This document shows, in pieces, positions 19,344-27,200 of a stretch of 64,000 bases of DNA. The translations under genes were made by a program, and so were the position numbers. The notes beneath the pieces are model-generated. The model saw only the letters and a list, made by a program, of their open reading frames with translations, searched no databases and had not been told where the DNA came from. Each line of letters opens with the position of its first letter. The stretch's first letter is position 1. Source of the stretch: Oikopleura dioica (lineage: Eukaryota; Animalia; Chordata); NCBI GenBank assembly GCA_907165135.1, contig OU015569.1:3286001-3350000 (forward strand), written 5' to 3'.

Positions 19344-20632
19344 ATGTCTGGTCTTGGTTATAACACGCTGGATCAAACTGCCAAGAAGTTTAGGAAGAAG
19401 CAAGACAATAATGCGTTGGGATTTCTATTGAACCTATTTCAAAATTTGATGTTCGACGATGCCATTCTATCTTGTATTTTCGGGTTCGAAATCCCTTGAT
19501 AAGATACATATGAGTTTTACGGATCTGTGGATGATCGCGGTAGACGAACGTGGGACACGGCAGCGTACGAGCGTAAAGCTAAGTACGGCCATGCTGGGAC
19601 TGTTGCGACGGACTTGAAGTCGGACAAGCGCAACCTACCGCCGAGTCAGCGAGACATGCTGAAAGCGAGAGACTACAAGGTCGATCTGGATTCTAAAGTT
19701 AACAGAACAAGTGTCGTATCAATGACAGACGGTGGAAAGGTAAACTCTATGCACGATTTCACCAAAAATACATAATTGAAGGATGGTTCCGCTGGATATT
19801 ACTGTGAAGTTTGTGACTGCGTGATCAAAGATTCAATGAATTACTTGGACCATATCAATGGACGAAAGCATATTCAAAACCTTGGAATGAGTATGAATTT
19901 GAAAAGATCTACTGTAGAAGACGTCAAAAATCGGTACTGATTAGATATCACAGTATTAGTTTACTTGGAAACTGTATGTAGCTTTAAAATGCACAAAGAG
20001 AAGAAAGTAGTCGAAAAAAAGGAATACTCGCTGGCAGAGAGGCTGGCTGATGCAGCTGAGGAAGAAGAGAGAATGGCAGCTTATTCGCAACAGGCAAGGG
20101 TCAGTCAGTGATTCATGTTATAATTTCCGCTAGGTTAAAAAAGATCGAAAACAGCGCAAACGAAACAGAGATGAAGAAAAACGACAAAACGACTTAGAAC
20201 TCAAACGAGCAAAGGTAACCTAGTTTTTAAGATAAAATGAAACGATGAGAATATTTTAGCGTGCTATGGAGGAAAAGCTAAGAAAAGAGCATGATGCTCT
20301 TATCGAAGAAAATCGAAAGAAAGAAGCCCAGAAAAAAGCTGAATCAAGACGACCAGGCTCATCTGACGAGGACAGCCCATCTGAAAAAGACAATCCACCA
20401 CCTCCTCCTCCTCCAAAGGTTCTTTATTTTCGCCCTTCTGATGTCATTTGTCCATTTTTTTTGAATAAATCAGTCCCTAGACTCCCGAATGAGGAGTTTA
20501 ATTTTGAAACTGATTTATTAATTAATATTGTAGCCGGTGAGCGAGGATTTATTAGCCGCAGCGGACAATGACGATGATATGATGGCCGCGATGGGTTTTG
20601 GAGGCTTTGGGGGATCTGCAAAGGATGCGTAA
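19344..20632 (+). CDS. ZMAT2: Zinc finger matrin-type 2 / Snu23 spliceosomal protein
   Basis: [56 protein letters not shown] and C-terminal [11 protein letters not shown]. The first exon is uncertain. Confidence 0.92.
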
Positions 20633-20719
20633 TTATTTTACAAAAATTTCAATTATCATTGCCACACTACAAACATGATCACTTTCCTAAATTTTAACTA
20701 AGTTTTTAACCTTTTTAGA

Positions 20720-23700
20720 ATGACAGAGGACAAGAGATTCGAGCGATTCAAAACAGATCCCAAATTCAAGAGTCTACGAAAGAACAGAAACAAAGTCAAA
20801 CTTGATGACCGGTTTACCGAAGTGCTGAGGTAATTTTTTCCATTTTTATTTATAATTGCATTTGAGAAAAGAAAGGTTAACGAAAGAATGACATAAATAG
20901 AAGGTTGAATAAGACAGTGGAGGATTGGATAAATAGCGATTAGAATAGTAGGGTTAATACTCGGAAAACAGGAGCCGATCGGCATCGTCAACTCGCACAA
21001 CATTTCGAGTTCCGTCTTGATTGACTCGGAAGGTAGTCAGCTCGTTTGTTTCCTCATCGAGTTCACTTGTGACGTAGACTGGAACGTCGACATAGACTGG
21101 ATAATCCTCATAGACAACGTTCTGCACCTCGTTTGCTGACTGCTCAATTTTGGACTCGTCGGAAGTCGCATACTCGAAGAGCACGTCCTTGGCGTTGTCA
21201 GATCTAAGGAAGGTTCGGGAACCATCTTCGTTGATTTGGAAAGTAAGAACTGTTCCACTTTCGGGGTCGTAATCAGTTTCAATGTAAACTGGCAAGTCGA
21301 TGTAAACGGGGTAGTCTTCGTAGATGATTTCAGGCTCAACACTTTCTGTTGTAGTAGTCGTGGTGGTTGTGGTTGGAGCAGCATCAGTTGCGCTCTCGGA
21401 AATAAATTCAACGTTCTCGGCAGGATCGACGCGCAAGAGAGTTCGTGAGCCGTCTTCATTGTATTTGTATGTGTAGATTTCGTTGGTGGTTTCATTGAGT
21501 TCGGTATCGACCCAGACGGTGACGTCGACATAGACGGGGTAGTCCTCGTAGATTACCTCTTGAGTTGTAGATGTGGTAGAAGTTGTCGTTGAAGTGGTCG
21601 TTGAAGTGGTCGTAGTAGTCGAAGTTGTGGTAGTTTCTGGTTTGGAAGTAGTTGTTCCCTTGAAAACAATATTGTCTCGAGGATCAACTCGGATCAAAGT
21701 TCTTGATTCGTCGTCATTGATCTGGTAAGTGTAAACTTTCTGGTTTTCATGGTCGATCACGGTTTCGACATAAACAGGAACATCAATGTAGACTGGATAG
21801 TCGACGTACTGTACGTCTTCTGTTGTGGTTGTAGTGGTTGAAGTTGTGGTCGTAGTGGTAGTAGTTGTGGTGGTAGTGGTTGTTGTCGTAGTCGGCTTAG
21901 TAGTCAATTCCTGCATGATGATCATTCTTTGAGGTCTTGGCATCATGATTGGCATTTTCTGCATATTTTGTTGTCGAATGAGCCGTTGTTGTTGCTGGAT
22001 AAGCTTCTGTTGTCGCTGCAGAAGATTGTTGAGGCTCAACATGTGCTGTTGGGTGTTCAATTGTTGCCGTTGACGTTGAAGCATGAGGTTCAATTGGCGA
22101 GAAGCATGAATTCGATTTCGTGGACGCATTGCTTGAGCAACTTGTTGTGGTCTCATGACGACGGTTCCAGGAGCCTGTTGGTAGAACTGCTGAGAGTTGA
22201 CGGTCGAAGAAAAAATCAGAAAGAGGGTTTGCAAGATCATTTTGGAAGTTGTTGATCGAACTGTTCTGAGTTTGTCAAGTTCCCTTTCCTTCTTATACTC
22301 CGATCAGCTGCGGCGGTAAAGAGTGGCACCTGTCATAAAATTAGGTCGCTAGAATCGGAACGATGCACATGATAGATAAGGAGGTCGATTAGAGCATGAT
22401 AAAAATTTCACAGAGCGTAACTCCCATATTGCGAGCGAATTCGCATTCTGGGTATGGGAATCTAATTATTGCATTTAGTAAAAGCGGCGAATTCAATCTC
22501 GAATGGAAACGTGATCGCTATGGCAAGAAACTGTCCAAGTCGTCGACCGAGAACTTCAACCGTTTCTATGAAGGAAATGCACACAAATCTAGAAAAGAAT
22601 TTAAATCGAGGATTCTTGATGAAGATGACGATATGAGCCAACAAGATCTAGGAAAAGACTTCGATAAGATTCGAGGAATGGGAGCTGAAGTAGATACCTC
22701 TGAATCGGAACCTGACTCGGAATCTGAAGCTGAAAGTGATGGTGACGACCTCTACGATCAGGCCAAGGATGAAGTAAAAACCGCAGCCGAAATTTTCCCC
22801 CGACTGGCGATGCAAAATATGGATTGGGATAGAATCAAAGGAAACGTGCTTATATTCGCAAATTCTTTTATTTTCGCGTTGTTAGATAAGTTCACTTTAA
22901 AGCACTCGTAAGCCGTTGATATTTACGTATTAGTTGCGTCTGTGCTCCCTGAGGGCGGGATCTTAAAAAAGGTGACCGTTTACATGTCCGAGTTCGGAAA
23001 GAAGATGACCGCAATAGAGGCTAAAGAAGGACCCAGGCTTGCTGATGTAGGTTCAAAATTCTCGTTGATCAAGATAGCGATATTTCATTTATTCAGAGCT
23101 CGAAGGAAGACATGAGCGAGGAGGATCGTCTCAGAGCCTACCAGCTAGAGCGATTAAAGTATTGCTATGCGGTGATTGAGACAGACTCTGCAGCTACTGC
23201 AGATGCCATCTACAGTGAGCTTGATGGCCAGAGTGTCGGAGAATCTGGTAGTTTTATCGACCTTCGATTTATACCCGACCATGTCAGTTTCGACGATGAC
23301 GCACCAAGACTCCAAAGAACAAACAACTTGCCCGATGAATGTACTCAAAAGCCGAGGAATTACGATTTGCCAGAATTCGTTACATCCGCCTTGAGTCGAA
23401 CAAAAGTGAATCTGACGTGGGATGAGCAAGATCGTGGAAGAAAATCGATTGTCTCAAAGTTACGAAAAGGTAAAAAAACCAATCCTATTGATTAAATTTT
23501 TGTGGCCGGCCGATTCATTGCTTATAAAATGATTAAGGAGATCTTGTTGACGACCAAATTAGTCACCTAATCGCTTCTGGCTCTGAATCAGAAGACGAAA
23601 GCACCCTTACAAAGTACCGTTCTCTCGCTGGAGGTGCGGGAGCTTCAAGTAATGGCGCAGTCGAATTCAAGATGGAACGAAAAGAGAACAATTCTGACGA

Positions 23701-24257: not shown

Positions 24258-27200
24258 ATGAATACAGACTCGTAGTCGTGTCCTTGTGGACAATGGATAA
24301 TATAAAAATATTTTAAAGACAAGTCTGATGGTATTGGTAAGTACTGCTCTTCATATTCTTGTGTTTATTTCCTATTAGTAAACTACGTGGGAAAACTGCG
24401 TAAGGCAGTGCCCTCCCTTTCTCGTGCTGGCGATGATAGTCGTCATATTCTCATCAACGAACATCAATCGGAAAAGTTCTCTAAGAATGCCATCGGTAGT
24501 ACCTTACAACAATTTTTTGTTCGTAATACATTGCTTTTAGCTACGGGGAAATACAACATCTTCACATTTGTTCCCTACTTCTTATTTTCTCAATTCAAAC
24601 GCGCGGCGAATGTCTTCTTCCTTGTGATTTCTATTCTGCAGCAGGTGCCCAATGTTTCTCCGACTGGCCAGTGGACGACGCTGGGGCCGCTTATGTTCAT
24701 CCTTTCTATTTCGGCCCTTCGCGAAATCGCTGAAGACTACCGCCGGCAACGCGACGACGATCAAACAAACAACAAACTCACCAAAATTGTCAAAAACGGA
24801 AAATTGGTTAAATGCAAGTGGAAAGACGTCCAAGTCGGCTCCATTCTCAAGATTGATTCGGGCAAGCAGTTCCCTGCCGACTTGATCTTGCTCGCTTCTA
24901 GTGAGCCCAAAGGAATGGCCTACATTGAAACATCGAATCTCGACGGGGAAACCAATCTCAAGCTAAAACAAGCTCTTTCTGTCACGGCTGATCTGACTAG
25001 CGACGTAGAAATAAGCACGTTGAGAGGGAACTGCGAAGCTGAAGCTCCGACGAAGCATCTCTACGAGTTCTACGGGAATATCAAGCTTAGCGACGAATCT
25101 CAGACGCACCCGCTCGACCAAGTGCAGCTTCTTCTTCGCGGCTCTCAGCTTCGAAACACCAAATTTGTCTACGGACTTGTTATTTACACTGGTGCAGAGA
25201 CCAAGCTGATGAAGAACTCTCGTCAGGCGCCATTAAAACAGTCTAATGTGGAGTTTTCCGTCAACTACCAGATTCTATACATGTTCTTCGCACTCTTGAC
25301 CCTCTCAATCATTTCCACCATTGGAAAAATCTATGTTGCGAAATTTCTATGTGTCCATTGGTATCTTGACGGGATTTATGATGTTCAGCCAATCAACGGA
25401 ACATCGTACGACCCGAACAGCAGCGATCCTATTTGCGAGTCACTGGATGCAGCCGGAGTGGTGAAAACGCTCATGACATTTTTGATTTTGTACAACAACG
25501 TTGTCCCCATTTCTCTTTTGATCAGTATCGAAATCGTGAAGTACGTACAAGCGATATTTATCAATCAAGACGAGCTTATGGAATGGAACGACACGAAGGC
25601 AAAAGCTCGAACGTCCAATCTTAACGAGGAACTTGGGCAGATCTCCTACATCTTCACGGATAAAACAGGCACCCTGACGGAAAATGTGATGGAATTCAAA
25701 AAATTCTCCGTTTGCGGGGAGCTTTTTTCTGCAGACGAGAGCGATCTGACAATGGAAGACAACATCAGCGAAATTCAGCGAAAAATTGACTACGTTGAAT
25801 CGTCTGGTTCTTCAGACACAAAGGGAGACATTGAGCGATTCCTTCAAATGCTAGCCGTCTGCCAGACAGTCGTTCCAGAATACTCTGATAGTGGTGAGCT
25901 CGAGTACCAAGCAAGTTCGCCGGATGAAGCAGCGCTAGTGAAAGCCGCTGCTAAACTACAGTATGTTTTTAAAAGCCGAACGCCAATATCAATGGATGTG
26001 CGGGAACGAGGAGAGCTGAAGACTTATCAGCTCCTCCATGTTCTTGAATTTTCTTCGGCTAGAAAACGGATGAGCGTTATCGTCGAAACTCCTGAGGGGC
26101 AACTCTTCCTTTTCTGCAAGGGCGCAGACACAGTAATCTACGAGCGATTACAAGCAGCAGCGGAGGGCTCTAGGGATTACCAAATTCAAAAGAATACTGA
26201 AGAGCACCTTGAAAAATTTGCCACAGCTGGTTTGCGGACTTTGTGTTTTGCCTTCTGTGAGCTGGACCGAGAATTCTATGAAAGGTAAGTTCAAGTTAAA
26301 AAAGAGCGCGTCGAATCAATAAATAATACATTCATACCATTCCAATTTGGTAGTTCCAAAGAAGTGTTAATTCCTTTCATTAGATGGCGAACTAAGGAGC
26401 TCGAGCCGGCGAGCACATCAATCGTCGATCGCGAAGGCTCCCTGGAGAGTGCCTATTCGAAAATCGAAAAAGACCTTATCCTTGTTGGTGCCTCAGCTGT
26501 TGAAGATAAACTCCAGCAGCAAGTTCCCGAAACTATTGCAAAGCTTCGCCAGGCGGGTATCGCTATTTGGATGTTGACCGGTGACAAACAAGAAACCGCT
26601 GTCAACATCGGTTTCTCCTGCAAGCTCATCGATCAGACACAGCAACTATACGATCTCGACTGCGATTCCTTAGAATCGACGAAATCTCGTCTTCAATCCA
26701 TCAAAGAAGAAGTAGAGCCTCTTCTAAAGGAGGGAAAACCAATCGCTATGATTATAACTGGAAGAACAATGAAATTTGTATTCAAGCAAACGACCAGGTA
26801 GTAAAAGCTCTTATCTAGTATTTTATTATAAATTAAGGGACTACTTTATGCATCTCGCCGTCAATTGCAAATCCGTCATTTGCTGCCGCGTCAGTCCGAG
26901 TCAAAAAGCCGACATTGTCAAAGCAGTGAAGAAAGAAGTAAAAAAATCTATCACTCTTGCTATCGGTAAGTGTACATTTCTGCTATCTTTTTTAAAGTTT
27001 TAAGGTGACGGAGCTAATGATGTTCCAATGATTCAATCGGCTCACATTGGTATCGGAATATCAGGCAATGAAGGGCTGCAGGCTGCAAACTCTTCTGATT
27101 ACAGCATTTCCCAGTTTTATTTCCTACAGCGGCTGTTACTCGTTCATGGTGCCTGGAATTACTGGCGGCTTGTCAAGTGCATTCTTTTCTCTTTCTACAA

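What the first reader, a model, noticed from the sequence alone, without database searches (positions are those of the whole stretch)
20954..22240. Intronless antisense gene in ESF1 intron 1 encoding a secreted mucin-like protein with four copies of an unrecognised ~53-aa domain
The layout is signal peptide, Gln/Met/Arg-rich region, then four repeats separated by poly-Thr or acidic linkers: EDVQYVDYPVYIDVPVYVETVIDHENQKVYTYQINDDESRTLIRVDPRDNIVF; QEVIYEDYPVYVDVTVWVDTELNETTNEIYTYKYNEDGSRTLLRVDPAENVEF; PEIIYEDYPVYIDLPVYIETDYDPESGTVLTFQINEDGSRTFLRSDNAKDVLF; QNVVYEDYPVYVDVPVYVTSELDEETNELTTFRVNQDGTRNVVRVDDADRLLF. The repeat is beta-strand-like, Tyr/Val-rich, acidic and Cys-free. Aromatic-rich modules on O-glycosylated stalks are what a cellulose- or glycan-binding structural protein of the larvacean house (oikosin-like) could look like; that role is inference. 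The lack of introns suggests retroposition or de novo insertion into a housekeeping operon.
Basis: partly seen in the sequence, partly recalled or inferred. Interest (0 to 1): 0.8.

Follow-up and report, generated by a model that had tools for sequence, protein, structure and literature searches.

The report
Orphan secreted mucin-like repeat gene in Oikopleura
A real, selection-maintained Oikopleura dioica gene sits backwards inside the first intron of ESF1 and encodes a secreted, threonine-rich protein carrying four copies of a small beta module known only from larvaceans; its suggested role in the animal's "house" is plausible but untested.

Summary
Window 20954-22240 (-) is an uninterrupted 428-codon ORF. 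It encodes a signal-peptide-like N-terminus, a basic Gln/Met/Arg/Leu-rich region, poly-Thr or acidic linkers, and four Cys-free, acidic, Tyr/Val-rich 53-aa repeats. It lies antisense inside the 1649-nt intron 1 of ESF1 (exon 1 20720-20829, exon 2 from 22479).

It is a real gene. The Norwegian O. dioica ortholog keeps the same position next to ESF1 and an open frame. In the repeats, pN is 0.08-0.14 against pS of about 0.75-0.85. A TATA box and upstream blocks are conserved between the two lineages.

The Norwegian copy has three repeats (it lacks R2), and its database model wrongly splices out coding sequence.

The module matches no Pfam family and no solved structure. A profile search of 1.84 billion proteins finds the whole module only in O. 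dioica. A single C-terminal copy occurs in a Met/Leu-rich secreted Oikopleura family. Bacterial and propeller hits cover only an "NxDG(S/T)" hairpin motif. AlphaFold2 predicts a three-stranded beta meander (pLDDT 84) with no significant structural neighbour.

No named oikosin matches, and no expression data were available. The house or cellulose-binding role therefore stays a hypothesis. Retroposition has no support. This is an ordinary kind of larvacean orphan secreted protein with an undescribed module.

The parts
20954..22240 (-). Complete uninterrupted CDS, 428 codons plus stop
   Evidence: ortholog with open frame in Norwegian O. dioica; pN/pS well below 1
22193..22240 (-). Signal-peptide-like N-terminus (MILQTLFLIFSSTVNS, aa 1-16)
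   Evidence: read from the sequence; most hydrophobic 19-residue window of the protein; Norway has MIYRAIILLLSATC. No signal-peptide predictor was available
21905..22192 (-). Basic Gln/Met/Arg/Leu-rich region (aa 17-112), net charge +13
   Evidence: conserved but less constrained (pN 0.28, pS 0.55)
21821..21904 (-). Poly-Thr linker 1 (aa 113-140, 93% Ser/Thr), mixed ACN codons
21662..21820 (-). Repeat 1 of the 53-aa module
   Evidence: 81% identical to Norway R1
21563..21661 (-). Thr/Ser linker 2 (aa 194-226, 85% Ser/Thr)
21404..21562 (-). Repeat 2, absent from the Norwegian ortholog; carries the only N-glycosylation sequon (NET at aa 249)
21335..21403 (-). Acidic plus poly-Thr linker 3 (aa 280-302)
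21176..21334 (-). Repeat 3
   Evidence: 85% identical to Norway R3; pN 0.08 against pS 0.74
21125..21175 (-). Short acidic linker 4 (aa 356-372), conserved between lineages; modelled as disordered
20966..21124 (-). Repeat 4, followed by SEY and the stop codon
22293..22297 (-). TATA-like element 53-57 nt upstream of the ATG, conserved in Norway
   Evidence: promoter role is inference
22313..22341 (-). Conserved upstream block containing the E-box CAGGTG (22327-22332)
   Evidence: conserved although synonymous sites are saturated; regulatory role is inference
22375..22390 (-). Second conserved upstream block (AATCGACCTCCTTATC)
20845..20850 (-). AATAAA about 104 nt after the stop; the transcript's 3' end would abut or overlap the ESF1 exon 1 donor
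   Evidence: read; inference
20720..20829 (+). Host gene ESF1, exon 1 (MTEDKRFERFKTDPKF...)
20830..22478 (+). ESF1 intron 1 (GT...AG, 1649 nt), which contains the whole nested gene
   Evidence: acceptor conserved in Norway; RRM_ESF1 and NUC153 downstream

Best explanation
This is a working, lineage-restricted protein-coding gene of Oikopleura dioica. The gene appears to have its own TATA-type promoter inside intron 1 of ESF1, on the opposite strand. Its product is most likely secreted and heavily O-glycosylated on its poly-Thr stalks. It presents a basic Gln/Met/Arg-rich head and three or four acidic, Tyr/Val-rich beta modules as beads on a flexible string. Each module is predicted as an extended YPVYxDxPVYxE segment followed by a three-stranded beta meander with tight DG-type turns. 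The most likely role is as a structural or adhesive component of a secreted extracellular matrix, with the modules acting as multivalent binding or cross-linking units. The cellulose-and-glycoprotein house is the leading candidate matrix. What is shown: the gene, its nesting, purifying selection, the architecture, and the restriction of the module to larvaceans. What is inferred: secretion, glycosylation, the fold, and all function.
For: ORF and architecture. Nesting in ESF1 intron 1. Norwegian ortholog on FN657182.1 has the same head-to-head position about 238 nt from ESF1 exon 2 and an open frame of at least 336 codons. Purifying selection: repeats pN 0.08-0.14 against pS 0.74-0.85 (saturated); whole gene pN 0.18 against pS 0.70. 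Conserved TATA box and upstream blocks despite saturated silent sites. No Pfam or PDB sequence match. The exhaustive profile search finds the full module only in O. dioica. The module recurs as a single C-terminal copy in a second secreted Met/Leu-rich Oikopleura family (BLASTP E 1e-8; independent 7-repeat HMM E 9e-5 at Z=18000). AF2 on one repeat: pLDDT 84, strands at 17-23, 28-34 and 40-47. In the two-repeat model the linker is disordered. Background: house proteins are highly glycosylated and 35 of 80 (44%) have no detectable homologs (PMC3390340).
Against: No transcript, proteome or in situ evidence could be consulted. No named oikosin matches, although named oikosins do exist in that database. 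This absence is weak evidence, because the only Norwegian model is partial and sits on an unplaced 2.7-kb scaffold. The signal peptide is judged by eye, and the Okinawan one has no basic n-region. The fold comes from an 11-row alignment. Structural neighbours are non-significant (Foldseek E at least 0.24; VIA Z at most 3.4). A truncated, frameshifted partial copy exists in environmental Oikopleura-like DNA, and copy number differs between lineages. This suggests the repeat array is evolutionarily labile.
Confidence: 0.5

Rival explanations
1. A secreted mucin-like protein of another matrix, not the house. Candidates are endostyle or pharyngeal mucus, a gut or faecal-pellet coat, or a gamete coat. 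The modules would serve as lectin-like or self-associating units there.
For: The same sequence features fit any O-glycosylated secretion. It is not among the 80 named oikosins as far as the searches can tell.
Against: Nothing specific. The house is simply the dominant secretory product of the animal and is rich in orphan glycoproteins (PMC3390340).
Confidence: 0.3
2. The module is a diverged member of a known beta-hairpin or propeller repeat class (PD40- or lactonase-type blade, YD/RHS-like, or the unnamed bacterial 'NPDGS/T' repeats). It may even have been acquired from bacteria, so it would not be a new domain.
For: The profile search hits bacterial repeat proteins over positions ~20-52 or ~30-49 (P0016 E 2e-5, P0027 E 2.6e-4, P0010, P0014). 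Several hits carry PD40 or Lactonase domains. Many weak structural neighbours are single propeller blades.
Against: The protein itself hits no such Pfam family even at E up to 10. The bacterial hits belong to unrelated architectures and share only a 13-33-residue DG-turn motif. The YPVYxDxPVY half is found only in Oikopleura. The long disordered linkers and 3-versus-4 copy variation argue against a closed propeller. Structural scores are in the noise.
Confidence: 0.1
3. Not a functional gene: a chance ORF in low-complexity intronic DNA, or a decaying pseudogene.
For: Low-complexity Thr and Gln tracts make long ORFs on several frames here. A frameshifted partial copy exists elsewhere. The database model for Norway is partial.
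Against: The frame is open in two lineages whose silent sites are saturated, with pN/pS of about 0.1-0.2 in the repeats. The four repeats have diverged to 45-57% identity yet keep the same motif. Promoter blocks are conserved. The chance of such an ORF is about 1e-9.
Confidence: 0.03
4. Origin claim: the gene is a retrocopy, or a recent insertion, into the ESF1 intron.
For: The CDS has no introns, although introns are common in the host genome. The location is inside an intron.
Against: No parental paralog carries the four-repeat architecture anywhere in the 64-Mb genome. No poly(A) tract or target-site duplication is seen at the 3' end. The same position relative to ESF1 exon 2 is found in the Norwegian lineage, so any insertion is old.
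Confidence: 0.07

Closest known systems
Oikosins (Oikopleura house glycoproteins; Hosp et al. 2012, PMC3390340)
   Same: Same organism. Signal peptide, predicted heavy glycosylation and modular repeats. Lineage-restricted sequence, as for the 44% of oikosins with no homologs.
   Different: No sequence match to any named oikosin. Presence in the house and expression in the oikoplastic epithelium are untested. It lacks the CUB, EGF, CCP, ZP and other domains seen in many oikosins.
Mucins / PTS-domain secreted glycoproteins
   Same: Long Thr/Ser tracts (93% and 85% Ser/Thr) separate folded modules in a secreted protein.
   Different: No cysteine at all, so no VWD, CysD or cystine-knot oligomerisation. 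The tracts are short (23-33 aa). Pfam mucin-type models hit only at noise level.
Met/Leu-rich secreted Oikopleura family (for example UniProt E4X3U1_OIKDI / CBY23729.1; own-genome loci L003, L010, L011, L012)
   Same: Secreted and larvacean-restricted. It ends in one copy of the same module (PVYIQRPVYIE...TIYRTFQLNPDGTKTLI). BLASTP E 1e-8.
   Different: One C-terminal copy rather than four. The body is made of Met/Leu/Asp-rich repeats instead of poly-Thr. In three of the four own-genome paralogs the YPVY half is degenerate.
PD40 / lactonase-type beta-propeller blades and unnamed bacterial 'NPDG(S/T)' hairpin repeats
   Same: DG-turn hairpin motif (xVNxDGSRTxI) and a predicted three-strand meander that superposes on single blades (rmsd 1.0-1.4 A over 29 residues).
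   Different: All scores are below significance. The modules are separated by long disordered linkers and vary in number, so no closed propeller is expected.
Plant extensins (analogy from general knowledge, not tested)
   Same: O-glycosylated stalks alternating with Tyr-rich motifs in a cellulose-based extracellular matrix.
   Different: No sequence relation, no Ser-Hyp motifs, and a YxY motif in only two of the four repeats. Peroxidase cross-linking here is pure speculation.

Membership tests
Oikosin (house protein) | Detected in the house proteome, or expressed in the oikoplastic epithelium | not testable with these tools
   No RNA-seq, in situ or proteome data are reachable. The papers read give no mapping to this locus.
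Oikosin (house protein) | Sequence identity or homology to one of the 80 named oikosins | tested here: not met
   Word searches with the whole protein and with residues 303-428 return only an 'unnamed protein product, partial'. The related Met-rich family also has no named member. The exhaustive profile search adds none.
Mucin-like (PTS) secreted protein | Extended tracts dominated by Thr/Ser(/Pro) | tested here: met
   aa 113-140 is 93% Ser/Thr, aa 194-226 is 85% and aa 280-302 is 57%.
Mucin-like (PTS) secreted protein | N-terminal signal peptide | tested here: inconclusive
   A hydrophobic N-terminus is present in both lineages with small residues at -3 and -1. No dedicated predictor was available.
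Gel-forming mucin | Cys-rich oligomerisation domains (VWD, CysD, CK) | tested here: not met
   Zero Cys in 428 residues; no such Pfam hits.
PD40 / Lactonase beta-propeller repeat | Pfam model match above the gathering score, with repeats contiguous enough to close a propeller | tested here: not met
   These families are not listed even at E up to 10. Linkers of 17-33 disordered residues separate the repeats. Copy number is 3 or 4.
RHS/YD repeat | Match to PF05593 and the YD dipeptide periodicity | tested here: not met
   No hit for the query. One bacterial look-alike, P0010, scores only E 0.16.
Retrogene | Intron-bearing parent gene, poly(A) remnant, target-site duplications | tested here: not met
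   No paralog with this architecture in the genome. The 3' flank shows only AATAAA and a run of six A.
Carbohydrate-binding module (cellulose-binding) | Homology to a CBM family, or a planar strip of exposed aromatic residues in a reliable structure | tested here: inconclusive
   No CBM family in Pfam, the PDB sequence search or the fold searches. Model coordinates could not be inspected for aromatic geometry. A binding assay is needed.

The most novel reading that the evidence does not exclude
The 53-aa YPVY/NxDGSRT module is a larvacean-born extracellular domain that binds cellulose or house glycans, or zips molecules together through its Tyr/Val-rich strand. With the Met/Leu-rich family that carries one copy, it would define a previously unseen class of house-building proteins missed by the 2012 proteome because the reference gene model was broken. 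That would make it an animal-specific carbohydrate-binding or matrix-assembly module.
Probability: 0.12. Interest if true: 0.7.

Novelty: new variant of a known kind. Interest (0 to 1): 0.35.

Why it matters
If the product is a house component, the catalogue of 80 oikosins is incomplete for a trivial reason: a broken model on an unplaced scaffold. It would also supply a compact, Cys-free, easily expressed module for asking how a cellulose-glycoprotein filter is assembled outside cells. The locus is also a clean example of an antisense gene nested in an intron that has stayed in place between cryptic O. dioica species whose genomes are otherwise heavily rearranged (PMC11067885). Such cases are useful for benchmarking annotation of compact genomes. 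Otherwise it is one more orphan secreted protein in a genome that is full of them.

Tried and rejected
- **Pfam at E up to 10** and the **PDB sequence search** gave only low-complexity noise.
- **ESM Atlas look-alikes**: no feature hit. The Atlas's own model is poor (pLDDT 0.40), and its structural rows have TM below 0.3.
- **Foldseek against the PDB** and **VIA-align against 48,161 chains** gave nothing significant.
- The **'atlas' fold library** was unavailable.
- **Complex prediction** on two copies of one repeat returned 'no answer' (score 0.00, controls not run, alignment not used). This is neither support nor evidence against self-association.
- The **bacterial promoter/terminator scan** is irrelevant for a eukaryote and uninformative.
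- **Matching the published oikosin in situ primers** to the locus was considered and not done.
- **Earlier notes of this scan** near the locus and by keyword held nothing on this gene.
- **A closed four-bladed propeller** made of the four repeats was considered and rejected. The linkers are long and disordered, and Norway has only three repeats.
- ESF1 exons were read one at a time.
Full report
**What is there**

- aa 141-193 (window 21662-21820)
- aa 227-279 (window 21404-21562)
- aa 303-355 (window 21176-21334)
- aa 373-425 (window 20966-21124)

The repeats are 45-57% identical in protein and 55-63% in DNA. They are therefore old duplicates, not a recent slippage product.

Composition:
- The protein has 80 Thr and no Cys.
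- Residues 17-112 are 61% Q/M/R/L with net charge +13.
- Linkers 113-140 and 194-226 are 93% and 85% Ser/Thr.
- Each repeat carries a charge of -8 to -10 and 6-8 aromatic residues.
- There is one N-glycosylation sequon.

The Thr tracts use a mix of ACN codons, which points to selection for threonine rather than a pure microsatellite. A 428-codon open frame has a chance probability of about 1e-9.

**Organism and context**

The window is C2:3286001-3350000 of a 64.28-Mb, 19-contig genome. The only database relative is from Oikopleura dioica. Size and scaffold number fit the Okinawan OKI2018_I69 assembly (PMC8008620).

ESF1 lies on the plus strand:
- Exon 1 is 20720-20829 (MTEDKRFERFKTDPKFKSLRKNRNKVKLDDRFTEVL) and ends at a GT donor.
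- An AG at 22477-22478 is followed in frame by SKSGEFNLEWKRDRYGKK.
- RRM_ESF1 (E 1.4e-21) and NUC153 lie further downstream.

The whole ORF therefore lies antisense inside a 1649-nt first intron. Its stop is 124 nt from exon 1 and its ATG is 238 nt from exon 2. ESF1's ATG directly follows a ttttag and lies within about 90-150 nt of the end of the preceding plus-strand coding ORF. This fits an operon-type arrangement, but I did not verify it. I read the ESF1 exons separately and built no joined model.

**Is it a gene?**

The Norwegian O. dioica scaffold FN657182.1 (L004, 2716 bp) carries ESF1 (RRM_ESF1) head-to-head with the ortholog. Read straight through, the ortholog is open for 336 codons until the contig ends. 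It has the same order of parts: signal peptide, Q/M/R region, poly-Thr, R1, Thr/Ser linker, R3, acidic linker, R4.

A codon alignment gives the following:
- R1: pN 0.108, pS 0.847
- R3: pN 0.081, pS 0.743
- R4: pN 0.142, pS 0.750
- All repeats together: pN 0.13, pS 0.79
- N-terminal 112 residues: pN 0.28, pS 0.55

Silent sites are saturated while the protein is kept, so purifying selection is strong on the modules and weaker on the head.

The 240 nt between the ATG and ESF1 exon 2 align at 71% column identity. Three elements are conserved there:
- a TATA-like element (22293-22297)
- a 29-nt block with the E-box CAGGTG (22313-22341)
- a 16-nt block (22375-22390)

An AATAAA sits 104 nt after the stop (20845-20850), just inside the ESF1 exon 1 donor. 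Together these indicate an independently transcribed gene. Transcription itself was not observed.

**Differences between lineages, and database state**

Norway lacks R2 and the surrounding Thr/Ser tract. R2 is only 49-57% identical to the other repeats, so it is old. The simplest reading is loss in the Norwegian lineage, perhaps by recombination between Thr-coding tracts. Gain cannot be excluded without an outgroup.

The public model (P0001, 240 aa, 'unnamed protein product, partial') omits two in-frame stretches that are conserved in Okinawa: most of the Q/M/R region plus poly-Thr, and part of linker 2. That model is therefore mis-spliced.

Two metagenome contigs (L013, L014) carry a different, 89-93% identical copy. 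It has R1 and R3 only, a shared frameshifting deletion after RVDPR, and unrelated flanks. It looks like a decayed partial duplicate in some Oikopleura population.

**The module**

Pfam gives nothing (best hit TssR_M, E 0.004, below cut-off). The PDB sequence search gives nothing.

A profile of 11 sequences (A2) was scored against 1.84 billion representative proteins and returned 38 hits at E up to 0.001. They fall into three groups:
- The whole 53-residue profile matches only P0001 and the two partial copies, P0002 and P0003.
- A Met/Leu-rich secreted family (P0006, which is E4X3U1_OIKDI, plus P0008, P0020, P0022, P0026, P0033, P0037 and P0038). Four paralogs lie in this genome (L003, L010, L011, L012). 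Each ends in one copy of the module.
- Bacterial repeat proteins that match only 13-33 positions around xVNxDG(S/T)xT. Their architectures are unrelated: PD40, Lactonase, Big_12, CshA-type fibril repeat, or none.

The link to the Met/Leu-rich family holds without circularity:
- tblastn-type E 2e-4 genome-wide
- BLASTP E 1e-8, 4e-6 and 6e-4 for three different repeats against the same 40 residues of the L003 protein
- E 9e-5 (Z = 18000) with an HMM built from the seven true repeats only

With that same HMM, the bacterial proteins P0016 and P0027 reach similar per-repeat scores over positions 20-52. I therefore treat the meander half as one instance of a widespread DG-turn hairpin pattern. The full module (YPVYxDxPVY plus meander) appears specific to larvaceans.

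**Predicted structure**

AlphaFold2 on A2 gives pLDDT 84 and pTM 0.52, with strands at 17-23, 28-34 and 40-47 and an extended N-terminal segment.
- Foldseek against the PDB finds no match better than E 0.24. The nearest are 29-residue overlaps with lactonase blades.
- VIA-align against 48,161 chains peaks at Z 3.4. Many rows are single propeller blades, well within background.
- A model of R3-linker-R4 has pLDDT 64 with a disordered linker. It draws the YPVY segments as long strands at low confidence.
- A homodimer test gave no verdict.

The fold is thus a small, generic beta meander. 'No known fold' cannot be claimed for so small a unit, nor can membership of any family.

**Function**

Nothing here measures function. 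The layout is a signal peptide, O-glycosylatable stalks and multivalent acidic aromatic modules, plus a basic head of opposite charge. This is what one expects of a matrix or mucus component that binds a polymer or its own kind at several points.

In O. dioica the main secreted matrix is the house. House proteins are heavily glycosylated and nearly half have no homologs (PMC3390340). I put about 0.5 on an extracellular structural or adhesive role with the house as leading candidate. I put 0.3 on another secretion (endostyle, gut, gamete coat), 0.1 on the module being a diverged known repeat class, and little on a non-gene.

No named oikosin matches. Earlier follow-ups in this scan did retrieve named oikosins from the same database. 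This argues against the protein being one of the published 80. It says little about house membership, because the Norwegian reference lacked a usable model. Cellulose binding and tyrosine cross-linking are speculation.

**Origin**

There is no intron-bearing parent, no poly(A) remnant and no target-site duplication. The nesting is shared by Okinawa and Norway. Retroposition or recent insertion is unsupported. The shared module suggests descent from, or domain exchange with, the Met/Leu-rich family.

**Verdict**

The locus is a real orphan secreted mucin-like gene with an undescribed larvacean module, nested antisense in ESF1. This is of moderate interest to larvacean and annotation specialists and is not surprising in kind.

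Noticed in passing
L003:661-1701 (+) (G000 C1 ~9.494 Mb); also L010, L011, L012 (C4 ~9.38 Mb, C4 ~11.14 Mb, C5 ~9.72 Mb): A family of ~310-350-aa secreted proteins built of Met/Leu/Asp-rich repeats (MMMMQ..., LLPLLLLDDD...). Each ends, after a single Cys, in one copy of the module (…PVYIQRPVYIE…TIYRTFQLNPDGTKTLI). There is no Pfam match and no named relative. Relatives occur in marine metagenome and metatranscriptome data.
   Followed up: partly
L004:1707-2714 (Norwegian scaffold FN657182.1) against protein P0001: The public gene model for the Norwegian ortholog removes two in-frame, conserved coding stretches as introns (most of the Q/M/R region plus poly-Thr, and part of the next linker). 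It is also cut off by the contig end. The ORF is in fact continuous.
   Followed up: yes
window 21404-21661 compared with L004: Repeat 2 and its Thr/Ser stalk are present in Okinawa and absent from Norway. Copy number therefore differs between cryptic species, 4 against 3.
   Followed up: partly
L013 (ENA ERZ27250700) and L014 (ENA ERZ791567): Two independent metagenome contigs carry the same truncated copy (R1 + R3 only), 89-93% identical to Norway. Both share a frameshifting deletion after RVDPR and have unrelated flanks. It is probably a decayed partial duplicate.
   Followed up: partly
window 22313-22341 and 22375-22390 (-): Non-coding blocks upstream of the nested gene are conserved between Okinawa and Norway although silent sites are saturated. 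One contains the E-box CAGGTG. They are candidate cis-regulatory elements lying inside the ESF1 intron.
   Followed up: no
window 20570-20720 (+): ESF1's start codon follows a ttttag acceptor within about 90-150 nt of the end of the preceding plus-strand ORF, as in Oikopleura operons with trans-splicing. If so, the nested antisense gene sits inside a polycistronic unit.
   Followed up: no
window 20830-20850: The nested gene's AATAAA lies only about 15 nt from the ESF1 exon 1 donor on the other strand. The two transcripts would then probably overlap tail to exon by a few bases.
   Followed up: no
window 24387-26801 (+): A P4-type phospholipid-flippase ATPase gene (PhoLip_ATPase_N, Cation_ATPase) lies directly downstream of ESF1.
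   Followed up: no
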